46,099 nucleotides of DNA from Octopus bimaculoides. Taxonomy: Eukaryota. Under the pieces are notes generated by a model. It made no database searches and was not told the origin of the DNA. It worked only from the letters and a program-made list of their open reading frames with translations. The translations under genes and the position numbers were made by a program. Below are positions 2,901 to 45,705 of this stretch, piece by piece (the stretch's first letter is position 1; every line of letters begins with the position of its first letter). The stretch spans positions 181,631,329-181,677,427 of the forward strand of contig NC_068981.1 in NCBI RefSeq assembly GCF_001194135.2. The letters are read 5' to 3'.

Positions 2901-2969
2901 GTTCTATTTTCAGTTAATATTGATTTTTGATTAACATTGATTAACTTTGATTTTCTTTTTTTTTCTCAG

Positions 2970-3089
2970 AGTTCTTCAGTGCAGGAATCTAGTTTCAGTG
3001 GTTTTAGACCTGCAACATCAACTGCTTCATTAGCCCTGTCTTCTAGGCCACAGAGTGACCGGTTGGCAGCCATAAAGTCAGCATTTGCT
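2970..3089 (+). CDS. DDX42: DDX42 penultimate coding exon
   Basis: Poly-pyrimidine+cag acceptor and gtaagt donor; 120 nt, phase 0/0; SSSVQESSFSGFRPATSTASLALSSRPQSDRLAAIKSAFA resembles recalled human GDRLTAMKAAFQ. An in-frame alternative acceptor would start at 2985. Confidence 0.88.
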
Positions 3090-3373
3090 GTAAGTATTCT
3101 CTCAAATGGAAACCAAACAAATTATCTTTTATTTTACTACAGATTGTTAAACTATATTCTTCTAACACTGTTGCTGTTACATCGCTTTACATGTTGGCAT
3201 AGAGTTGCACCATCTATCACATATATGAGACGTGTGTTAGAAATATGTTTGTAGAATTAGCAATTAGTAATTTTTTCATAACTTACCTGGTAATTTGGGT
3301 ACTACTAAACACTTTGTCTTTAAGACTGGTGATATGTAGTTCTCAAGACCTACTTAATTCTTATTTCTTTATT

Positions 3374-3592
3374 GCCCACAAGGGGCTAAACATAGAGAGG
3401 ACAAACAAGGACGACAAAGGGATTAAGTCGATTACATCGACCCCAGTGCGTAACTGGTACCTAATTTATCGACCCCGAATGGATGAAAGGCAAAGTCAAC
3501 CTCGGCAGAATTTGAACTCAGAACATAATAGCAGACGAAATACCGTTAGGCATTTCACCCAGCGTGCTAACGATTCTGCCAGCTCGCCGCCG
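3374..3592 (-). mobile_element. SINE-B variant with different tail
   Basis: Core shared; tail ...cccttgtgggcaataaagaaa on the element strand. Confidence 0.8.
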
Positions 3593-4342
3593 TTTCTGCC
3601 AACCCATGTGTAACTTCCCCAAACGGCTATTTTCAGTTTTTCAGCCATCCATTGGCAGTTACCCATCCACAGCAATGCTGTCATCTTCCCTGTTAAACAT
3701 TGATCAATGCTTATTCTACCCAGTTATTTTCTAAATTCTAAAATCATTTGCATTAAACTCTTCTTATAAATTAATATTGTACATCCAGCAGATCATACTG
3801 CATTACTTTCTAATTTAGATGCAATTACACTCACAAAGTGACCCAGTTTACTTTTTAGCTCACTTAGGTATTATCATTAATGTTAGACAGTAAATTTACA
3901 AACTGTTATTCAAAAAGGCTCCCAGCTTGAGAAGCTGCACTCATTTATACAAATGCTTCAAATGAATTTGAAGAATCAATCTTGCTTAAGCCCTCCACTC
4001 CTTATAGAATACAGGCCACCAACATCTTCTATCCCTCTTGGTCTCAGCTCTGGGCTGTATATCTCCCTGAAGGGAATGTCTTCCTCTCCCAGATTTTGTT
4101 TGTTCTGAATCATCGTTGATGCTTTTGTAACTTATCTTTTGCTAGGTAGGGGTGTTAGCCCTATGGAAACCCATTTTTACTTTTGGAAAGAGCTGATCTA
4201 TCTTTTGATCTTTCCAGTATGGGAGACTGTACAGGGAGCTTGCACTTCTATTGACATAACTCTTAAGGTCATTGAAGTCCAAAAGTCACCACACTCCAAC
4301 AAGGACTGGATCTTGTGGTGGAATCTTGCCATGATAGTACGA

Positions 4343-5621
4343 AAAAATGGTCATCCCATAAGTTCTGTCCGATTTTACCCTTTTAAAAATTAAATAAAAT
4401 GTAATTGTATTTTAGAATGTCTAATGGAATTAAAAATTATTTTTATGCATTTGTGTACATTTAAACTAATTAAATATTATTTTACAGAATAATAGAATTA
4501 AAATTTCTTTGATTAAAACCGTTTCTAACATGGAAGTATCCAAAGAGCATTTAAGGCACATAAGGCTTTATGAGTACAAAAAGGGAAACTCTGCAGCCGA
4601 AGCGACTTGAAACACACACTCAGTTTATGGGAAAGAATGCTTGAATGAAAGAACTTGCAGAAGATGGTTTGCAAAATTCAGAAGTGGAGATTTCAGCCTT
4701 GTTGATGAAGATCAAACAGGACGTCCAGTTGAGTTTGATGATAAGCTCCTTGAGGTATTACTTGAAGAAAATCCTGCATTATCAGTTGAAGAATTGGCAA
4801 TAAAGCTTATTTCAAACCAAACAAATGTTCATCTTCAACAACTTAGAAGGGTTCCTACTGGAAAATGGGTGCCTCGTGAATTGTCTGAAAGCAACCGCAA
4901 ATCCTGAGTTGACATCTGCTCTTCTCTCCATTCTCACAAACTCATTTCACCCTTTTTGGATAGACTTGTGACTGGTAATGAAAAATGGATCTTCTATCGA
5001 AATGTTAAACGTAAACAATAGCTTGGTAAAAGGGAAAAAGCTCAACCACAACTGAGAAGGGAACTTCATGGGAAATATTTCTTCTCTCTATCTGGTGGCA
5101 TTGCAAAGGAGTAATTCACTTTGAATTGTTACCACCTAATGCAACAATCAATGCTCAAGTCTACTGTCAGCAATTAGAGCGTTTGAACCAAGCTTTGAGG
5201 AAAAAAAAAGACCCGCTTTAGGGAATCGAAAAGGAGTGATGTTTCATCAGGACAATGCGCAACCCGACACAGCAAAGATCACCTCACAGGAGATCGAAGA
5301 GCTTGGTTGGGAAAAAATTCCTCATCCACCTTATTCATTCGACCTTGCTCCTTCAGACTACCATTTATTTTGTAGTCTACAGAATCATTTGGGGGGACAT
5401 AACTTTCGCAAGCCAGGAGGAGGTCGAAACTGACATTTCAGAGTGCTTCGCTTTGAAACCAAAAGAGTTTTAGAGTGATGGGATTAAAAAGCTTGTAAAT
5501 AGATAGAAGGAAGTCATAGATAATCAGGGAAAGTACATTGATGATTAAATTTCAATTAAATATAACATTTGATCACTTGTTTCCTTCAAAATTTGGACAG
5601 AACTTATGGGATGACCTGATA
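4343..5621 (+). mobile_element. Near full-length decayed mariner (DD34D-type) in last DDX42 intron
   Basis: TIRs ggtcatcccataagttctgtcc (4349) / ggacagaacttatgggatgacc (5595-5616); transposase relic from ATG 4530 with WVPREL, TGNEKW, HQDNA, YSFDLAPSDYHLF; stops and frameshifts. Confidence 0.95.
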
Positions 5622-5739
5622 TTTAGCAATCTGTTTCTAGTCCAAAATTAGTGAGTAATGACTTGATTCTTTGGAAAGTTATTGTTTTTTTTATCCTTTC
5701 AAGATTTTTCATTGAAGTACATGTTTCTATTTTATTTAG

Positions 5740-5871
5740 GCTCAATTCAAATCGAATTTTGTGGCTGCATCAGAAGAAAACAACACACAATTAATGCACC
5801 AACCTAAATTAAGTGAAAATACGGAGTTACAGCCAGACAGTAAACGCCGTAAAAAAAGTCGGTGGGATTAA
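5740..5871 (+). CDS. DDX42: DDX42 terminal coding exon
   Basis: ttttatttag acceptor; AQFKSNFVAASEENNTQLMHQPKLSENTELQPDSKRRKKSRWD*; matches recalled human SQYKSHFVAAS and terminal KRKKSRWDS. Confidence 0.92.
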   Translation, partial: AQFKSNFVAASEENNTQLMHQPKLSENTELQPDSKRRKKSRWD

Positions 5872-10999: not shown

Positions 11000-11200
11000 C
11001 TTTCTACAATAGGCACAAGGCCTGAAATTTGTGAGAGGGAGATAGTTGATTACATCGACCCCAGTACTCAACTGGTACTTGATTTATCAACCCTGAAAGG
11101 ATGAAAGGCAAAGTTGGTCTCAGCAGAATTTGAACTCAGAACGTAGTGACAGGCAAAATACTGTTAAGCATTTCACCCGGCGTGCTAACGACTCTGCCAG
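11000..11200 (-). mobile_element. SINE-B (further - copies at about 12605-12820, 27145-27365, 35685-35815)
   Basis: Family core motifs. Confidence 0.8.
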
Positions 11201-21462: not shown

Positions 21463-21648
21463 NNNNNNNNNNNNNNNNNNNNNNNNNNNNNNNNNNNNNN
21501 NNNNNNNNNNNNNNNNNNNNNNNNNNNNNNNNNNNNNNNNNNNNNNNNNNNNNNNNNNNNNNNNNNNNNNNNNNNNNNNNNNNNNNNNNNNNNNNNNNNN
21601 NNNNNNNNNNNNNNNNNNNNNNNNNNNNNNNNNNNNNNNNNNNNNNNN
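21463..21648. other. Assembly gap (others: 35386-35395, 36669-36867, 41656-41950, 45366-45522)
   Basis: N runs, all adjacent to microsatellites, A-runs or SINEs. Confidence 0.99.
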
Positions 21649-23855: not shown

Positions 23856-24647
23856 CAGGGTTGGCCAAAATTCACCTGACAGTAAAAGTCAGCAAATTGG
23901 GTCAATGGGTTCCTCACAAACTTTCTGAGTCTAATCGTGCGCAGAGAGTGAATGTGTGTTCTTTGCTGGCACATCTCACGAATGTGGACCAAATAGTGAC
24001 TGGTGACGAGAAATGGGTTCCCTATAAAAATGTCAAGCACCGAAGACAGTGGATAGGGAGAGGAGAAACACTGGCAACCCAGGCTAAAGAAGATCTTCAC
24101 TCTTGTAAGGTGTTGTTATCTGTTAGGTGGGACATGAAAGGTTTAGTCCACTTTGAACTTTTAAACTCAAACCAAATAATAACAAATGAGATCTACTGTG
24201 ATCAGCTGGAGTGGCTTAAGTCACCGTTAGAAGAAAAACAACCATCTGTGGTTTCAAGACAAAAGGTGTTCTTCCAACAGGATAATGCTCAGCCACATAC
24301 AGCGAGGATGACATTCCAAAGGCTGGAGAATTTCAATGGGAAACAATGCTCCACCCACCATGTTCGCCAGACATTGACCCATTTGATTATCATTTATTCC
24401 ACAGTCTTCAAAATCATTTGGATGGAAAAAATATGAATTCTGTAGGCAAGATCAGAACAGTACTTGGAGGAGTATTTTTCATCACAGACAAGTAGATTTG
24501 GGAAGAGGGGCCTTGCAAGTCTACCAGATAGATGGAAGAGCATTGTAGAAAATGAAGGAGAGTATACTTTAGATTGAAAAAGAACTTGTTCATCTTAATT
24601 TTGAAAAATAAAAGTATAAAACAACGGCATTATGGGATAACTCAATA
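23856..24647 (+). mobile_element. 5'-truncated mariner relic in COMMD3 intron 1
   Basis: WVPHKL, TGDEKW, QQDNAQPH motifs; right end cggcattatgggataactcaata resembles the other mariner TIR. Confidence 0.9.
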
Positions 24648-26279: not shown

Positions 26280-26582
26280 AATATGGTACGTAAAAGCACC
26301 ATCCGAACGTGGTCGATGCCAATGTCCCCTGACTGACTCTCATGCCAGTGGCATGTAAAAAGCACTATCTGAACATGATCGATGCCAGAGCTGCTTGACT
26401 GTCTCCCATACTGGCGGCACGTAAAAAGCACCCACTATACTCTCAGAGTGGTTGGCATTAGGAAGGGCATCCACCCATAGAAACATTGCCAGATCAGATT
26501 GCTGGAGCCTGGTGCAGCTGCTGGTTTTCCAGAACTCAGTCAACCGTCCAACCCATGCCAGCAAGGAAAACGGACGTTAAAT
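26280..26582 (+). mobile_element. RTE 3'-tail copy
   Basis: gtaaaagcacc units followed by the terminal module. Confidence 0.8.
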
Positions 26583-27945
26583 GATAGATAGATAGGATAG
26601 ATAACGGGCTTCTTTCAGTTTCTGTCTATGAAATCTACTTGCCCAAGGTGCCATGCAGTGGGACTGAACTCGGAACCATGTGGTTGGGAAGCAACCTTCT
26701 TACCAAACAGTCACTCCTGCGCAGATATATGTGCTGTAATCGTGTTGTTTCTGAAAAAGACCATATAGTTATGATGTCATCGGAAGACGTTTTTGAGGTC
26801 TTTGTTTATGGAGTCAATGCAATTTGGACAGGGTGTTTGGGCTACCTGTGATTTGGTGTGAGATGTCTAGGTTGCATATAGATACCACTTGGGTATGGAA
26901 GGCAGGGAGAAATGCAATATGATATCATTTGGTTAATGTTAGAAGTGACAAGTAAGTTAGTAATGCAGGAGAGAAAGAGTATTTTTGGCGGAGGTGGATT
27001 AGCGTCATCCATGTATGTTCTACAAAACACACATGGATGAGGCTATTCCAAAACTCTATCGTGACAAAATATTGGTTTCAAATGTCGCTAAGCGTTTTGC
27101 CTGGCACCATAACGATTCTGCCAGCTGGCCGCGTTATCGAGACAAAATGTTGAGTTCAAATTTTGGCACAAGGCCAGCAATTTCGGGAAACGGGGCAAGT
27201 CGATTATATCAACCCAAGTTTTTAACTGGTACTTATTTTACCGACCCCGAAAGGGATGAAAGACAAAGTCGACTTCGGCAGAATTTGAACTCAGAACGCG
27301 AAGACGGACGAAATGCCGCTAAGCATTTTACCCGGTACAGTAACGATTCTACCAGCTCGCTGGCTTATCGAGACAAAATATTAGAAAATATTTAGTCCGG
27401 TACTTCAAATGTGTTGGTTATTCCTTGCTGTTACAAATATACCCACTGCTACAATCATATTAAACTAAGAAAATATATGCCCGCCATCTAGTCCATGTAA
27501 ACAAAATACAAATACAAAACAGTTTAGATAACGAACGAAACATTATAAATAGCTGAAACAATACATATACTAAGTATCACTAAACACTACAAACATATTT
27601 AAAATAGGTGTTCCTGCTGTAAAAATTAACGAAGTTCTATTCACATATTTATTAAAGCAGATTTCCAAAAAGTGGGCGTGCTTGAATGAATTATTAAGCA
27701 ATATAGCAACATCTATTCGTTCTCAGTCACCCCGTTTATAATGTCCATTATTTTAAGAGTGCTCTATGAAAGTATAACATAAAGATTATTTACAATACAT
27801 TAAGACTTATTAAACAAAACGTCATTCACAGTCAGGTTCTTAATGTCTTTTCTTTGGACGTAAGAGGCTTGATACGATAACATGACACTATCAACAAAAC
27901 TAAAAGAGGAAGCATATCAAGAAGAATGAAAGGAGAAATAAATAC

Positions 27946-30232: not shown

Positions 30233-30620
30233 CATCCTCATCACTGTTTAATGTCCGCTTTCCATGCTGGCATGGATTGGACGGTTTGATGGAGGACTGG
30301 CAAGCCAGGAGGTTACACCAGGCTCCAATCTGATCTGGCAAGGTTTCTACAGCTGGATGACCTTCCTAACGCCAACCACTCCGAGAGTGTAGTGGGTGCC
30401 TTTTATGTGCCACCACAATGGGGGCTAGTCAAGTGGCACTGGCATCGACCACACTTGAATGGTGCTTTATATGTGCCACCTGCATGCGAGCCAGTCAGGT
30501 GACACTGGCATCGACCATGCTCGAATGGTGCATTTTACAAGCCACTGGCACGGGCATAGTTCATGCTTGAATGATGCTTTTTACATGCCACCAGTACAGG
30601 TGCCATTCAGGTAGCACTGT
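30233..30620 (-). mobile_element. RTE 3'-tail copy
   Basis: Tail module plus about 4 gtgccac units. Confidence 0.8.
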
Positions 30621-31354: not shown

Positions 31355-31917
31355 CACTTGTATACATGTGTGTGTGTGTATTGTGTGCTTAAACTGTGCT
31401 GTCTTTGTTAGTTATAATATCTTAATTATTAAATCATCTTGGGCTGCTCAAGACATGGCATCAAATAACACCTGCAAGATGAGAGGATATCCTTTCAGTA
31501 CTTCCTTAAATATTCCAAATTCCAGCAATCTTCCTTATGTTGTAAAGGATTTCATTTCTTTTATCCTTTTCCTCTTGCGATATTTAAAACTTCTCATGTG
31601 TTGCTAAACTACAACACTCTCAACTCTGTGGCAGCAACTGTTGATTTCTTTCAGGCTTCCAGAGGCAAGTGAATCATACCAGCTGATCCAAGAAGTGTGT
31701 TCCAAGTTCCCTGTAATAACTGTAGAGCCATTTTTGTTTGATAAAACCTGACCATGCAGACCTGTGGTCAGAAACAATCCAACAGTGACTATTCTGTCTT
31801 CGTAGGGGTATCTAGGATTTCACTTCTATTTCTAAAATGATAAGGTATAATCAGAAGGAGTTTTGGCTGCTATTTCTATTTATGTGGTTGAATGATCACA
31901 TATATATATATGTTAGA

Positions 31918-32140
31918 AAGGCGGCAAGTTGGCAGAAATGTAAGCATGTTGAGCGAAATGCTTAGCGGTATTTCATCTGTCTTTAAATTTTGAGTTTCTC
32001 AGTTCAAATTCTGCTGAGGTTGACTTTGCCTTTCATCCTTTCGGGGTCGATAAATTAAATACCAGTTGCATACTGGGGTCGATCTAATCGACTGCCCCCA
32101 CCCTCCCCAAAAATTTCGGGCTTTCTGCCTAGAGTAGAAA
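31918..32140 (+). mobile_element. SINE-B (further + copies at about 29930-30100, 38545-38750, 38870-39630 split, 39645-39848, 40090-40218, 40835-41030, 42888-43108)
   Basis: ggcggcaagttggcagaa head, ctgagttcaaat B-box, central core. Confidence 0.8.
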
Positions 32141-32898
32141 AGAAAGAATGACCACATAAAGGCTCTCTTGTTGGTTTGAGTCTGTTGTAGTTTATCATTG
32201 GACTATAAGGTATTGTACAATATGTCTGACGGCTTTTTTTTTTTGCCAACTTCTAAATTTAATTGCTCTTTTTATGGAATCTTCTCTGCCCGTTAAGCTA
32301 ATGATATTTTTCTGGCTCACTGATGATGTAATTTCTAATTAAATGAAATTTCTCGGTTCACTGCTTTATGTATGTTAGCACTGACTTTACTATTTATTTT
32401 TCATGCAGAACACATCCCTGGTTATTTCCCTTCACACACACACACACATTCTTTCTGTTTCCTCCCTCCCCCCTCTCTCTCATTTAATGATTTAAGTTGT
32501 CACACTCCTTCAAAGTTTATTCACCAAACCTTTATTTAACTCAGTCCTCATATACCCGCAATGCTGGTTTGACTATGCTATGTCGAGGAGGTCTAATAAT
32601 ATCTAAACTCATACAGAGTTATCCCTCACTGCTAATGATCAAACTCACTCCCTATTCAATTCTATTCATAATAAATTTAAATTACAGGACAATGTTCCCC
32701 TCGCTTTTATTTTACTAGAGTTAATCATTAAACTAATTTATTTTCTCAGTACAGACACCATTTTAAGGAATTAAAATGTCTTCATTCACTATATTTAATA
32801 TCTTAACACCGATATTATATTTTGATATAGTATTGAGCCTTGTTGTTTGAGGATTCCTCCATATGCTTAAAATCTTAACCATTGCTCAAAATATTTTC

Positions 32899-34446
32899 TA
32901 CAGAGGAATTGGGCAATAACAGAGGTTGCCCCTGGAAGCTCTTCTATGCTGATGACCTTGCTCTAATTGCTGAGTCACTATCAGAACTAGAGGAAAAGTT
33001 TCAAGTGTGGAAGCAAGGATTAGCATCAAAGGGACTTAGAGTTTTAACAAGTAGGAAGGCAGACAAACCACAAATCCCTTCAGGTAGGTGGCCCTGCTCG
33101 ATCTGTAGAAAAGGTGTAGGTAGAAACTCCATAAGATGTAGCCAGTGTAAGGTATGGACACATAAGAGGTGCAGCAATATCAAAGGAAGGCTAACTGGGA
33201 AGATAGTTTTTGTATGTGGCAAATGCTCAGGTGCTATAAACACTGAAAATGTGCAGAGAACAGCTTCTGTCACATTCCAAGGAGAAAAACTACAAGTACT
33301 TTCATTACCTAGGGGACCAAGTCAGTAGCGGGGGTGGATGCTCTGAAAGTGTAGCTGCTACAATAAGAATAGCCTGGGCAAAGTTAAGAGAGCTCTTACC
33401 TCTGCTGTTGACAAAGGGCCTCTCTCTCAGAGTAAGAGGTAGACTGTATGATGCATGTGTACGAACATGGCAGTGAAACATGGGCTGTGACTGCTGAGGA
33501 CATGTGCAAGCTCGCAAGGAATGAAGCCAGTATGCTCCGATGGATGTGTAATGTCAGTGTGTATACACGACAGTATAGGCATCCTGAGAAAAAAGTTGGA
33601 TTTAAGAAGCATTAGATGTGGTGTGCAAGAGAGATGACTGCACTGGTATAGTCATGTGTTGCGAATGGATGAGGACAGCTGTGAGAAAAAGAGTCACACC
33701 CTAGCAGTTGAGGGAACCTGTGGAAGAGGTAGACCCAAGAAGACCTGGGATGAGGTGGTGAAGCATGACCTTTGAACATTGGGCCTTACTGAGGCAATGA
33801 CTAGTGACTGAAACCTTTGGAGATATGCTGTACTTAAGAAGACCTGACAAGCCAAGTGAGACCATAGGCCATGGCCTATGCCAGAGGGTGTAACCAGCCC
33901 ACTTATGAAAACCCCTCATTCATTGAACAATAAACTTTGCTTGCAAAGACCTATTGAGGCAAGTGAAATCAAAATCAGAATTGCTGATGTATCTGATGAA
34001 AGTACCACCTGATTGGCACTTGTGCCAGTTAAAAGTACATCCGAATGTGATCGTTGCCAGGGCCATGGATTGGCTCCCGTGCCAGTGGCACATAAAAAGC
34101 ACCATTTGAGCATGATCATTGCCAGCGTTGCCTTACCGGCACATGTGCTGGTGGCATGTGGAAAACAACATTGCCAGTGCCGTCCCATGCAGGTAGCATG
34201 TAAAACACACCTTTTGAGCATGGTCATTGTCAGAACCGCCTTACTGGCCCTCGTGCCGGCGGGACTTAAAAGCAACCAATACACTCTTGGAGTGGTTGGC
34301 GTTAGGAAGGGCATCCAGCTGTAGAAACTTTGCCAGATCAGATTGAGCCTGGTGCAGCCTTCTGGCTCACCAGTCCTCAGTCAAACCGTCCAACCCATGC
34401 CAGCATGGAAAGTGGACGTTAAATGATGATGATGATGATGATGATG
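32899..34446 (+). mobile_element. 5'-truncated RTE-clade LINE
   Basis: YADD RT motif, C4HC3 finger, GRGRPKKTW-type C-terminus, stop near 33859, repetitive 3'UTR and (GAT)n tail; frameshifted. Confidence 0.92.
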
Positions 34447-35340: not shown

Positions 35341-35682
35341 TGTGGAGGCGCAATGGCCCAGTGGTTAGGGCAGCGGACTCGCGGTNNNNNNNNNNGCGAA
35401 AACACCTAAAGCTCCACGAGGCTCCGGCAGGGGATGGTGGCGAACCCTGCTGTACTCTTTCACCACAACTTTCTCTCACTCTTACTTCCTGTTTCTGTTG
35501 TGCCTGTAATTCAAAGGGTCAGCCTTGTCACACCGTGTCACGGTGAATATCCCCGAGAACTACGTTAAGGGTACACGTGTCTGTGGAGTGCTCAGCCACT
35601 TGCACGTTAATTTCACGAGCAGGCTGTTCCGTTGATCGGATCAACTGGAACCCTCGTCGTCGTAAGCGACGGAGTGCCAGCA
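35341..35682 (+). mobile_element. SINE family C with 11-bp TSD
   Basis: tRNA-like head ggaggcgcaatggcccagtggttagg; acttatttatt duplicated at 35330-35340 and 35683-35693. Confidence 0.85.
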
Positions 35683-36520: not shown

Positions 36521-36867
36521 TACATCCGCTTTTGATGCTAGCATAGGTTGGACAAGTCGGCTCTGTTCGTGTTAAGTTTTTATTCTGAGTAACTCTTTCA
36601 AGGCGTGGCCAGAGAATCACACCCCACTCACGTTTCCTTTTCGTATGGTTTCTTATAGAAAAAAAAAANNNNNNNNNNNNNNNNNNNNNNNNNNNNNNNN
36701 NNNNNNNNNNNNNNNNNNNNNNNNNNNNNNNNNNNNNNNNNNNNNNNNNNNNNNNNNNNNNNNNNNNNNNNNNNNNNNNNNNNNNNNNNNNNNNNNNNNN
36801 NNNNNNNNNNNNNNNNNNNNNNNNNNNNNNNNNNNNNNNNNNNNNNNNNNNNNNNNNNNNNNNNNNN

Positions 36868-39854: not shown

Positions 39855-40539
39855 TAGAGGGTGTCCCAAAAGTCACTGATGGGTTTTAATTTTTAGTAAC
39901 TTCCTTAACTTTTCAAATAAATGCATGAAATTTTGATACAATATAAAGGACATAATGGAAATTAATAGGCACAAGTCAAATTTTGCAACACCACTACATC
40001 ACATATGAAAAATGTCATCGTTTAAATGGTAGCCATTTTCAGCTTTGCATGCCCGTGCTCTTTCCAAAACTTGCACCATAACACCCTCAAGAGGTCAATT
40101 TGCCTTTCATCCTTTCAGGGTCGATAAATTAAGTACCAGTTGCATACTGGGGTCAATCTTATCGACTGGCCCCCACCCTCACCAAAAATTTCGAGCCTTG
40201 TGCCTCAAGTAGAAAAGCATTGGGTTGTCCAGAAAATTTGTGGTGATTTTTAAAGGAAAGAAAAAGGTCAATAAATACTTGCCATTACATTTTTTAATCA
40301 ACCAAATATGAACCATTTTGTTGCACAATGCATCTCCATCTTTCCTTTAACTTGAAAATACCCTCTTCCCAGAATTGAGGTGGTTTCATGGCAAATAAGT
40401 CGATAGGTAAGCTATTATAAATCAGCTCAAACTTTCCAGACAACCTAATATATCGTATCAAAATTTCATGCATTTATTTGTAAAGTTAAGCAAGTTATTA
40501 AAAATTGAAACCCCTCAGTGACTTTTGGGACACCTTGTA
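39855..40539 (-). mobile_element. Deleted Tc1/mariner-superfamily element with ~100-bp TIRs and nested insertions
   Basis: gggtgtcccaaaagtcactga / tcagtgacttttgggacacc plus inner IR taaatgcatgaaattttgata; minus-strand C-terminal remnant EGVMVQVLERARACKAENGYHLNDDIFHM*. Confidence 0.85.
40219..40450 (-). mobile_element. Mini-mariner (both TIRs, transposase C-terminus only)
   Basis: ttgggttgtccagaaa / ttccagacaacctaa; minus strand encodes FAMKPPQFWEEGIFKLKERWRCIVQQNGSYLVD*. Confidence 0.85.
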
Positions 40540-41270: not shown

Positions 41271-41951
41271 GAGTAACATATATATATAAATATATGCATA
41301 TATCCATCCATATATGTGCATACCTACATCTATATGTATACATACATGCATATATGGGTACAGGACATAAAAAAAAAAACGTTAAACACAATGAGAAACG
41401 AAAACATAAAAACGAACTTTTTTCAAACAACAAAAAAACAAACAAACAGAGAAACAAGACATGCAACATAAAGAGTATACCCCTTCGTCAGTTGTCCCTG
41501 TTTCATCTACTCCGCGTTTTGAAGGCAAGGACAATATGTGACTTCGTTGAAACAGTCCTTCCCGCTAAGCAAATTAAATAAAATTTGGGATTTTTTGTGG
41601 AGAGTGAAAGTGTTAACAAGAACAGGACAGTGAGAACAAGACAGCAAAAACAAATNNNNNNNNNNNNNNNNNNNNNNNNNNNNNNNNNNNNNNNNNNNNN
41701 NNNNNNNNNNNNNNNNNNNNNNNNNNNNNNNNNNNNNNNNNNNNNNNNNNNNNNNNNNNNNNNNNNNNNNNNNNNNNNNNNNNNNNNNNNNNNNNNNNNN
41801 NNNNNNNNNNNNNNNNNNNNNNNNNNNNNNNNNNNNNNNNNNNNNNNNNNNNNNNNNNNNNNNNNNNNNNNNNNNNNNNNNNNNNNNNNNNNNNNNNNNN
41901 NNNNNNNNNNNNNNNNNNNNNNNNNNNNNNNNNNNNNNNNNNNNNNNNNNA

Positions 41952-42862: not shown

Positions 42863-43119
42863 AATGTGAATATATAAGCATTGTAAGGTAGCAAGCTGGC
42901 AGAACCATTAGAACACCAGGTAAAATGTTTAGTGGAAGTTCATCTGTTTTTATTGTCTTTATGTTCTGAGTTCAAATTCTGCTGAGGTCGACATTACCTT
43001 TCATCATTTCAGGGTTGATAAAATAAGTACCAGCTGAACACTGGGGCCAATGTAATCGACTTACCCTCCCCCAAGCTTGCTGCCTTTGTACCAAAATTTG
43101 AAACCAATATATAAACAGA

Positions 43120-43585
43120 GTATTCATCATCATCATCATTATTATCATCATCATCATCATTGTTTAACGTCCGTTTTCCATGCTAGCATAGGTTGGACGG
43201 TTTGACTGAGGTCTGGAAAGCCAGGCGGCTGCACCAAGCCCCAATCTGATCTGGCAACGTTTCTACAGCTGGATGCCCTTCCTAACGCCGACCAGTCCGA
43301 GAGTGTAGTAGGTGCCTTTTACGTGCCACCAGCACAGGAGCCAGTCAGACAGGCTTGGCACCGATCATGTTTGGACAGTACTTTTCAGATGCCACCAGCA
43401 TGGGAGCCAGTCAGGGGGCACTGGTATCGATCATGTTTGGACAGTGCTTTTTACATTCCACTGGCACAGGAACCAGTCAGCGGGTATAGGCATCGGCTAT
43501 ATTCAGATGGTGCTTTTTATGTGCCACCGGCACAGGAGCCAGTCAGGAGGCATTAGCATCGGCTACATTCAGGTGGTGCTTTTTA
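43120..43585 (-). mobile_element. RTE 3'-tail copy
   Basis: (cat)n, terminal module and 4-5 tandem units. Confidence 0.85.
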
Positions 43586-45167: not shown

Positions 45168-45705
45168 GCGTAGGAGTGGCTGTGTGGTAAGTAGCTTGCT
45201 TACCAACCACATGGTCCCGGGTTCAGTCCCACTGCGTGGCATCTTGGGCAAGTGTCTTCTACTATAGCCTCGGGCCGACCAAAGCCTTGTGAGTGGATTT
45301 GGTAGACGGAAACTGAAAGAAGCCTGTCGTATATATGTATATATATATGTGTGTGTATGTGTTTGNNNNNNNNNNNNNNNNNNNNNNNNNNNNNNNNNNN
45401 NNNNNNNNNNNNNNNNNNNNNNNNNNNNNNNNNNNNNNNNNNNNNNNNNNNNNNNNNNNNNNNNNNNNNNNNNNNNNNNNNNNNNNNNNNNNNNNNNNNN
45501 NNNNNNNNNNNNNNNNNNNNNNCCAACATCGCTTGACAACCGATGCTGGTGTGTTTATGTCCCCGTAACTTAGCGGTTCGGCAAAAGAGACCGATAGAAT
45601 AAGTACTAGGCTTCCAAAGAATAAGTCCTGGGGTCGATTTGCTCGACTAAAGGCGGTGCTCCAGCATGGCCACAGTCAAAAGACTGAAACAAGTAAAAGA
45701 GTAAA
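45168..45705 (+). mobile_element. SINE-A (young copy, gap at its microsatellite)
   Basis: CpG-retaining full-length copy. Confidence 0.88.

What the first reader, a model, noticed from the sequence alone, without database searches (positions are those of the whole stretch)
4464..4804. Mariner in the last DDX42 intron carries an in-frame splice acceptor and polyA signal (exon-capture architecture)
Seen: the mariner is sense to DDX42. Its 5' leader has a branch-point-like aactaat (4464) and ttattttacag (AG 4486-87). Splicing the phase-0 DDX42 donor (3089) to 4488 reads NNRIKISLIKTVSN directly into the transposase ATG (4530), stops at TGA 4608, and an AATAAA follows at 4799. Known: SETMAR and CSB-PGBD3 arose by such intronic transposon capture. 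Inference: an alternative last exon could give DDX42 lacking its KRRKKSRWD tail, and a helicase-transposase fusion may have existed before the CGA-to-TGA change.
Basis: partly seen in the sequence, partly recalled or inferred. Interest (0 to 1): 0.7.

Follow-up and report, generated by a model that had tools for sequence, protein, structure and literature searches.

The report
Dead mariner transposon in DDX42's last intron
A decayed mariner transposon sits, in the gene's own orientation, in the last intron of the DDX42 helicase gene. Its splice-acceptor-like and polyA-like motifs are ordinary sequence inherited from its transposon subfamily, and nothing shows that DDX42 uses them.

Summary
The gene is DDX42: human DDX42 aligns across the canonical 3089^5740 junction and at the KRKKSRWD C-terminus.

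The element is a 1.27-kb mariner with HTH_48 and Transposase_1 domains and 28-nt inverted repeats. An intact 342-aa relative (L001, 95.5% nucleotide identity) has the same acceptor-like motif and the same AATAAA, and an almost identical leader (one base differs). It has CGA where the window has TGA.

A sister subfamily has a leader one base shorter, an in-frame TAA before the ATG, and no AATAAA.

The window copy carries 5 premature stops, 3 frameshifts, 3 in-frame deletions and a catalytic Asp-to-Asn change. Its lineage-specific pN/pS is 1.08, which is neutral decay. The acceptor ranks 3rd to 38th of 159 intronic AGs depending on the model. AATAAA occurs about once per kb.

No transcript data could be reached.

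Verdict: an ordinary intronic transposon relic. It looks like the first step of a KRABINER-type capture that was never selected. Cryptic low-level use is not excluded.

The parts
2970..3089 (+). Penultimate coding exon of DDX42 (SSSVQESS…LAAIKSAFA), ending in phase 0. The GTAAGT donor starts at 3090.
   Evidence: Human DDX42 aligns across the 3089^5740 junction.
3090..5739 (+). Last coding intron of DDX42 (2650 nt). It contains 159 AG dinucleotides.
3360..3605 (.). SINE-like repeat inside the same intron. About 18 copies or fragments occur in the window.
   Evidence: Self-BLAST.
4349..5619 (+). Decayed mariner element, sense to DDX42. The 5' inverted repeat is at 4349-4376 and the 3' inverted repeat at 5589-5616. 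The inferred 3' tip TGA is at 5617-5619, followed by TA at 5620-5621. The 5' tip and its TA are not recognisable.
   Evidence: Inverted repeat of 28 nt, 93% complementary. The 22-nt core occurs only twice in the window against 0 expected. Pfam HTH_48 at 1.9e-20 and Transposase_1 at 2.3e-22. 95.5% nucleotide identity to the intact copy L001.
4464..4487 (+). Branch-point-like aactaat plus ttattttacAG, an acceptor-like motif in the mariner 5' UTR, 43 nt before the ATG.
   Evidence: Identical in L001; TTTCAGAG in L002-L004. Ranks 3rd to 38th of 159 AGs depending on the model.
4488..4529 (+). Leader that is open in the transposase frame (NNRIKISLIKTVSN).
   Evidence: L001 has the same open leader with one base different (NNRIKISLIKTLSN). 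It is closed by TAA in L002-L004.
4530..4610 (+). First 26 transposase codons followed by the premature stop TGA at 4608-4610. This stop arose by CGA-to-TGA change at a CpG.
4799..4804 (+). AATAAA hexamer inside the transposase coding sequence (codons for A-I-K). It lies at +270 from the ATG.
   Evidence: Same position in L001, absent in L002-L004. Window density is 1.13 per kb.
4905..5506 (+). Further lesions of the transposase ORF:
- Stops: TGA 4905-4907, TAG 5019-5021, TAG 5471-5473, TAG 5504-5506.
- Frameshifts: about 5077 (-1), about 5201 (+2), about 5391 (+1).
- In-frame deletions: after about 4828 (-6), about 4857 (-3), about 5009 (-3).
- Catalytic Asp153 changed to Asn at 4977.
   Evidence: Alignment to L001 and L002, codon analysis, DD34D positions in P0001.
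5740..5871 (+). Last coding exon of DDX42 (AQFKSNFVAAS…KRRKKSRWD*). Its acceptor ttttatttAG ends at 5739.

Best explanation
This is a neutrally decaying, immobile mariner copy that inserted in sense orientation about 120 nt upstream of the 3' splice site of the last DDX42 intron.

The branch-point-like, acceptor-like and AATAAA motifs, and the open in-frame leader, are part of the transposon subfamily's own 5' UTR and coding sequence. They arrived with the insertion. Any sense copy of this subfamily in a phase-0 intron would show the same layout.

DDX42 is made through the canonical 3089^5740 splice, which joins a motif conserved from human. The mariner is simply removed with the intron (inferred).

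At most the site is a cryptic alternative terminal exon used at noise level. If a helicase-transposase fusion transcript ever existed, it was not maintained by selection.
For: Shown:
- Intact relative L001 (342-aa ORF, 95.5% nucleotide identity) has the same acceptor-like motif and AATAAA, and a leader differing at one base.
- Sister subfamily L002-L004 has a leader 1 bp shorter, an in-frame TAA before the ATG, and no AATAAA. The in-frame property is therefore not conserved.
- The window copy has 5 premature stops, 3 frameshifts and 3 in-frame deletions. Catalytic Asp153 is changed to Asn.
- Substitutions polarised with L002 as outgroup are 7 synonymous against 29 non-synonymous over 207 and 798 sites. 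That gives pN/pS 1.08, with a binomial p of 1.0 against neutrality.
- Human DDX42 aligns without a gap across the canonical junction and at the terminal KRKKSRWD.
- Under each scoring model at least two other intronic AGs score higher, and up to 37 do.
- AATAAA is at background density.

Inferred: a sense-oriented insertion that persisted long enough to accumulate about 3.5% lineage-specific change was tolerated. This argues that it does not strongly divert DDX42 processing.
Against: - The core TTTTACAG|A is a respectable acceptor when only a short T-tract is required (rank 3 of 159).
- It lies exactly where acceptors used in known transposase captures lie.
- A stop followed 190 nt later by AATAAA is a workable terminal exon.
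- No RNA data could be consulted, so use of the site is untested rather than refuted.
- The scoring matrix is a generic consensus written from memory, not trained on this organism.
Confidence: 0.8

Rival explanations
1. The mariner provides a cryptic alternative last exon (4488 to about 4820) that is used. The product is a DDX42 isoform that ends …AFANNRIKISLIKTVSNMEVSKEHLRHIRLYEYKKGNSAAEAT and lacks the conserved C-terminal 43 residues, including KRRKKSRWD.
For: - All the required motifs are present and in frame.
- The acceptor core scores well under a short pyrimidine-tract model.
- There is precedent for transposon-borne acceptors immediately upstream of transposase ORFs being used.
Against: - The extended pyrimidine tract is poor: 9 of 16 positions against 12 of 16 and 15 of 16 at the two real acceptors.
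- Other AGs in the same intron score higher under every model.
- The strong canonical acceptor lies only 1.25 kb downstream.
- The motifs are inherited rather than evolved here.
- The tail that would be lost is conserved from human, so substantial use would probably be harmful (inferred).
Confidence: 0.12
2. A functional DDX42-transposase fusion protein, an HTF gene of the KRABINER or CSB-PGBD3 type, existed and was selected before the TGA at 4608 arose.
For: - Before the CpG change, the reading frame from the DDX42 donor through the leader into a full transposase would have been continuous. L001 shows the ancestral CGA and an intact 342-aa ORF.
Against: - Lineage-specific pN/pS is 1.08, with stops and frameshifts spread along the whole ORF.
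- The catalytic Asp153 is lost.
- All 81 bona fide HTFs tested show purifying selection on the transposase part; this copy shows none.
- No protein in the 5.8-billion-sequence collection joins this family's transposase to host sequence. The only hits at 80% identity or more are free-standing 342-aa ORFs.
Confidence: 0.02
3. The AG motif is a functional acceptor of the transposon family itself. It would let copies be expressed from host read-through transcripts, the 'predisposed for exon shuffling' idea. Host-mariner chimeric transcripts would then occur at many loci in this genome, DDX42 being one of them.
For: - An AG preceded by a T-run is kept at the same alignment columns in both subfamilies (TTTTACAG and TTTCAGAG), 41-43 nt before the ATG.
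- Cosby et al. report this arrangement in 8 of 9 fusions examined.
Against: - The frame relation to the ATG is not conserved between the subfamilies.
- The leader is AT-rich, and such motifs arise readily in AT-rich sequence.
- No chimeric protein from this family was found in the collection, although the collection evidently lacks this organism's transcripts.
Confidence: 0.1

Closest known systems
KRABINER (ZNF112-Mlmar1 fusion of vespertilionid bats; Cosby et al., bioRxiv 10.1101/2020.05.07.082677)
   Same: A mariner inserted in sense orientation in the last intron of a host gene. An acceptor that already existed in the ancestral transposon lies just upstream of the transposase ORF.
   Different: KRABINER has a single intact fusion ORF, is transcribed, and is under purifying selection. 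Here the ORF is broken by 5 stops and 3 frameshifts, pN/pS is 1.08, and there is no transcript evidence.
CSB-PGBD3 (piggyBac PGBD3 in an intron of ERCC6)
   Same: An intronic transposon supplies an acceptor and a polyA site, producing an alternative terminal exon fused to upstream host exons. This rests on my own knowledge; mentions it only as PGBD3-CSB.
   Different: It belongs to a different superfamily. Its transposase ORF is intact and conserved and the fusion protein is abundant. None of that is shown here.
SETMAR (SET-Hsmar1)
   Same: A mariner transposase joined to a host gene by splicing into the transposon's 5' region.
   Different: Hsmar1 integrated downstream of the SET gene, not in an intron (PMC6326780). 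Its DNA-binding domain is conserved, whereas here the HTH would be truncated after 26 residues.
Ordinary intronic mariner relics with a DD34D transposase
   Same: Inverted repeats of about 28 nt, HTH_48 plus Transposase_1 domains, an element of about 1.27 kb, a 342-aa ancestral ORF with D153/D245/D280 spacing, and many inactivating mutations.
   Different: Nothing material. This is the category it fits.

Membership tests
mariner (Tc1/mariner superfamily, DD34D) | Short terminal inverted repeats at both ends | tested here: met
   Arms of 28 nt, 93% complementary, at 4349-4376 and 5589-5616. The 22-nt core is found only at these two places, against 0 expected.
mariner (Tc1/mariner superfamily, DD34D) | TA target-site duplication | tested here: inconclusive
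   TA is present after the 3' tip at 5620-5621. The 5' tip and its flank (AAAAAAT|GG) do not match the TA+TCA/TTA seen in L001 and L002.
mariner (Tc1/mariner superfamily, DD34D) | Transposase with an N-terminal HTH and a DDE/D catalytic domain | tested here: met
   HTH_48 at 1.9e-20 and Transposase_1 at 2.3e-22 on the frame-corrected translation. 89% identity to the intact 342-aa protein P0001.
mariner (Tc1/mariner superfamily, DD34D) | D, D(34)D catalytic triad | tested here: met
   P0001 has D153, D245 and D280, with 34 residues between the last two (counted to the PSD Asp). In the window copy D153 is Asn and the rest is out of frame.
Host-transposase fusion gene (KRABINER / CSB-PGBD3 type) | Transposon in sense orientation within the host gene, with an acceptor upstream of the transposase ORF derived from the ancestral transposon | tested here: met
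   Met as a sequence motif only: the AG at 4486-87 is identical in L001. Whether it is used was not tested.
Host-transposase fusion gene (KRABINER / CSB-PGBD3 type) | One continuous ORF joining host exons to a transposase domain | tested here: not met
   A stop occurs after 26 transposase codons, at 4608. Four more stops and 3 frameshifts follow.
Host-transposase fusion gene (KRABINER / CSB-PGBD3 type) | Purifying selection on the transposase-derived part | tested here: not met
   Window-lineage pN/pS is 1.08, from 7 synonymous and 29 non-synonymous changes.
Host-transposase fusion gene (KRABINER / CSB-PGBD3 type) | Fusion transcript observed | not testable with these tools
   The junction peptide search returned nothing, not even canonical DDX42. 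Exact-product look-ups for this locus returned nothing.
TE-derived alternative terminal exon (intronic polyadenylation) | Acceptor, in-frame stop and polyA hexamer in order on the sense strand | tested here: met
   AG at 4487, TGA at 4608, AATAAA at 4799. All are at background frequency or inherited from the subfamily.
TE-derived alternative terminal exon (intronic polyadenylation) | Junction reads and 3'-end reads | not testable with these tools
DDX42 (host gene identity) | C-terminal motifs colinear with human DDX42 | tested here: met
   8hk1_E and 7evn_E are the best PDB hits (E = 0.038). DRLTAMKAAFQSQYKSHFVAAS and the terminal KRKKSRWD both align. The helicase core lies outside the window.

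The most novel reading that the evidence does not exclude
This mariner subfamily (the L001 type) carries a working acceptor 43 nt upstream of its ATG with an open, in-frame leader. Every sense copy in a phase-0 intron would then act as a natural gene trap. In this invertebrate genome it would generate host-transposase chimeric transcripts at many loci. At DDX42 that would be a truncated isoform lacking the conserved KRRKKSRWD tail. This would extend the vertebrate 'transposase capture' principle to another phylum and catch it at its earliest, pre-selection stage.
Probability: 0.08. Interest if true: 0.45.

Novelty: new member of a known kind. Interest (0 to 1): 0.15.

Why it matters
As it stands, little: it is one more dead mariner in an intron.

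It has modest value as an example of step one of the KRABINER-type pathway. That step is a sense insertion in a last intron with a pre-existing acceptor and an in-frame leader. Here it was followed by neutral decay rather than domestication.

If RNA data showed the acceptor in use, there would be two consequences. It would document a transposon-made truncation of a conserved spliceosomal helicase tail. It would also give a tractable invertebrate case for asking how often transposon-borne acceptors are used before selection acts.

Tried and rejected
- **Junction peptide search.** I searched the 5.8-billion-protein collection with the hypothetical junction peptide (exon plus captured leader and ORF). 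One word-sharing candidate appeared and nothing was significant. Canonical DDX42 of this organism is also absent, so the negative result says nothing about splicing.
- **Exact-product look-ups.** I looked up three ORFs specific to this locus (4641-4907, 4139-4393, 2937-3254) to fetch the same locus from other assemblies or transcripts. None is on record.
- **Metagenome scan.** An exact scan of metagenome contigs for the 22-nt inverted-repeat core gave 0 matches.
- **Literature search for run accessions.** Searching for the SRA runs that hold the intact relatives gave 0 papers. The source organisms of L001-L004 remain unknown.
- **tRNA and Rfam scans.** Neither found anything in the window.
- **DDX42 tail as a UHM-ligand motif.** I looked for published evidence. 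The DDX42 structure paper says nothing about it, so it stays a resemblance from memory.
- **"Weak acceptor" as a firm conclusion.** I considered this and rejected it, because the rank moves from 38th to 3rd of 159 as the required pyrimidine tract shortens.
- **Third homology search.** I ran no further search on the 83-aa DDX42 tail. Close relatives would already have matched, and distant ones would not share so young an insertion.

Full report
**1.

- Exon 2970-3089 translates as SSSVQESSFSGFRPATSTASLALSSRPQSDRLAAIKSAFA and ends on a complete codon. GTAAGT follows at 3090.
- aactaat lies at 4464-4470, and ttattttacag ends with AG at 4486-87.
- Translation from 4488 gives NNRIKISLIKTVSN, then MEVSKEHLRHIRLYEYKKGNSAAEAT, then TGA at 4608.
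- AATAAA is at 4799-4804.
- The last exon, 5740-5871, encodes AQFKSNFVAAS…KRRKKSRWD*.

The window holds only these two DDX42 exons; 1-2969 shows no further coding stretch.

The gene identity rests on a sequence search of solved structures. The best hits are human DDX42 chains 8hk1_E and 7evn_E (E = 0.038). DRLTAMKAAFQSQYKSHFVAAS aligns without a gap across the 3089^5740 junction, and KRKKSRWD aligns at the extreme C-terminus. So the canonical splice is phase 0, joins a motif conserved from human, and this is the last coding intron.

**2. What the insert is**

Inverted repeats of 28 nt (93% complementary) lie at 4349-4376 and 5589-5616. Their 22-nt core occurs nowhere else in the window, against 0 expected.

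The frame-corrected conceptual translation hits Pfam HTH_48 (1.9e-20) and Transposase_1 (2.3e-22).

A search of the large protein collection found two close, intact relatives:
- P0001: 342 aa, 89% identity.
- P0002: 342 aa, 80% identity.
- All other hits are 70% identical or less.

Their contigs were fetched as L001 and L002-L004, all Logan assemblies of sequencing runs. P0001 has the mariner triad D153, D245 and D280, with 34 residues between the last two.

Comparison with L001 and L002 puts the consensus tip at TA + T(C/T)A + GGTCATCCC. The window's 3' end fits this (…CCTGA|TA, 5617-5621). Its 5' tip does not (AAAAAAT|GG).

**3. The key comparison**

L001 is 95.5% identical to the window copy over 1277 aligned bases, with 58 substitutions and 7 indel events.

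Three features match in L001:
- The acceptor-like stretch AAACTAATTAAATATTATTTTACAG and the sequence after it are identical up to one base, C in L001 for G at 4521.
- The leader is therefore open and in frame in L001 too (…LNIILQNNRIKISLIKTLSN-M).
- AATAAA sits at the same place, +270 from the ATG, inside codons for A-I-K.

L001 has CGA where the window has TGA at 4608, and L002-L004 have AGA. It is a CpG transition.

In the sister subfamily (L002-L004) the motif reads TTTCAGAG. The leader is one base shorter, and the ATG frame is closed by TAA four codons upstream. The AATAAA is absent.

Hence the "architecture" is an inherited property of one subfamily. It is not conserved even between sister subfamilies and is not something that arose at DDX42.

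Two things had to coincide at this locus: sense orientation, and a phase-0 intron. By general knowledge roughly 40-50% of introns are phase 0. That makes about one in five intronic copies of this subfamily expected to look the same (inference).

**4. State of the copy**

Relative to L001 the window copy has the following lesions:
- Stops at 4608, 4905, 5019-5021, 5471-5473 and 5504-5506.
- Frameshifts near 5077 (-1), 5201 (+2) and 5391 (+1).
- In-frame deletions near 4828 (-6), 4857 (-3) and 5009 (-3).
- A 4-bp deletion in the 3' UTR.
- A degenerate 5' tip.
- Catalytic Asp153 changed to Asn at 4977.

I polarised the substitutions with L002 as outgroup. The window lineage carries 7 synonymous and 29 non-synonymous changes, four of them stops, over 207 synonymous and 798 non-synonymous sites. 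This gives pN/pS of 1.08, indistinguishable from neutrality (binomial p = 1.0).

There is thus no footprint of selection on the transposase part at this locus. If the site were spliced today, DDX42 would gain 40 residues: 14 from the leader and 26 from the transposase. That is about half of the 50-residue HTH_48 domain. It would lose its conserved 43-residue tail.

**5. Are the signals better than chance?**

I scored all 159 AGs of the intron with a generic (Y)nNCAG|G matrix. The matrix was written from the textbook consensus, not trained on this organism.

| Pyrimidine tract scored from | Rank of 4487 | Score of 4487 (bits) | Rank of true acceptor 5739 | Score of 5739 (bits) |
|---|---|---|---|---|
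| -20 | 38 of 159 | -1.5 | 5 | +5.2 |
| -14 | 19 of 159 | +2.45 | 5 | +4.63 |
| -10 | 7 of 159 | +3.66 | 4 | +3.90 |
| -8 | 3 of 159 | +4.27 | 17 | +2.36 |

The other real acceptor, 2969, scores +11.2 bits with the -20 tract.

So TTTTACAG|A has a good core but an A-rich upstream tract: 9 of 16 pyrimidines, against 12 of 16 and 15 of 16 at the real sites. It is a credible cryptic site and not an outstanding one.

Other background figures:
- CTRAY branch-like motifs precede 25 of 159 AGs at 15-40 nt.
- 37 of 159 AGs would append at least 40 codons.
- AATAAA occurs at 1.13 per kb and ATTAAA at 1.02 per kb on this strand.

**6. Expression could not be tested**

The junction peptide found nothing in the protein collection. 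Neither did its DDX42 half, so the collection lacks this organism's DDX42.

Exact-product look-ups for three locus-specific ORFs were empty. A metagenome scan for the inverted-repeat core was empty. The run accessions of the relatives appear in no paper held.

The negative results are therefore uninformative about splicing.

What one search does show is this: within the collection, proteins at 80% identity or more to this family are free-standing 342-aa transposases. None is a host fusion.

**7. Comparison with known systems**

Cosby et al. (bioRxiv 10.1101/2020.05.07.082677) describe KRABINER. [quoted passage not shown] A single-base deletion then created one ORF.

[quoted passage not shown] All 81 fusions tested show purifying selection on the transposase part.

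The present locus matches steps one and, potentially, two of that pathway. It fails the defining later features: a continuous ORF, selection, and a transcript.

This turns out to be true, but by itself it does not refute capture, because that is the normal situation in real captures. What it removes is any locus-specific signal.

Hsmar1 integrated downstream of the SET gene (PMC6326780).

**8. Verdict**

This is an ordinary, neutrally decaying mariner relic in the last DDX42 intron (confidence 0.8).

| Alternative reading | Probability |
|---|---|
| Cryptic use as an alternative terminal exon remains possible | about 0.12 |
| A once-selected helicase-transposase fusion | about 0.02 |
| The AG is a general functional acceptor of the family (not exclusive of the others) | about 0.1 |

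Interest is low. The finding is a new member of a known kind.

**9. Other things in the window**

- About 18 SINE-like copies, one of them in the same intron.
- A second, unrelated mariner relic at 23885-24574 and a small fragment at 40297-40401.
- Five runs of N, indicating a draft assembly.
- A reverse-transcriptase-like, zinc-finger ORF at 32882-33328.
- Related 66-bp tandem units at three places.

The SINE reminds me of cephalopod SINEs. That is from memory only and was not tested.

Noticed in passing
window 3360-3605 and about 17 other places (e.g. 1681-1848, 1923-2080, 11036-11200, 27197-27360, 31915-32093, 42891-43063): A SINE-like repeat of about 170-240 bp occurs about 18 times in 46 kb at 69-87% identity to the copy in the DDX42 intron. 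ARAGORN and Rfam call nothing in it. It reminds me of cephalopod SINEs (memory only).
   Followed up: partly
window 23885-24574 (+), ORF 23861-24436; also 40297-40401 (-): A second mariner relic from a different family (40% amino-acid identity to P0001) with a 191-aa open stretch that retains QQDNAQPH, plus a small third transposase fragment.
   Followed up: partly
window 5845-5871 (KRRKKSRWD*): The DDX42 C-terminal tail matches the human terminal KRKKSRWD. It resembles a UHM-ligand motif (basic run, then R-W-D) of the kind found in SF3B1 and SF1. This is from my own knowledge; the DDX42 structure paper read here does not mention it.
   Followed up: partly
window 5651-5656 and 5692-5703: A perfect donor-like GTGAGT lies 32 nt downstream of the mariner's end. 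A strong acceptor-like ttttttttatcctttcaAG lies 36 nt before the true acceptor. Both are further decoy splice signals in the same intron.
   Followed up: no
window 21463-21648, 35386-35395, 36669-36867, 41656-41950, 45366-45522: Runs of N (10-295 nt). The window comes from a gapped draft assembly, and the gaps sit next to microsatellite-rich sequence.
   Followed up: no
window 32882-33328 (+): A 148-aa ORF with a reverse-transcriptase-like stretch (YADDLALIAES…) followed by a Cys-rich, zinc-finger-like segment. Probably a LINE relic.
   Followed up: no
window 26288-26432, 30395-30531, 43311-43585: Three short tandem arrays with a 66-bp unit whose consensus sequences look related to each other. 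Possibly internal repeats of another dispersed element.
   Followed up: no
L002 and L003 (runs SRR5319791 and SRR5319793): Two contigs encode the identical intact 342-aa transposase P0002 but have different 3' flanks. At least two genomic copies with identical ORFs therefore exist, which suggests a recently active sister subfamily in some sequenced organism whose identity is unknown.
   Followed up: partly
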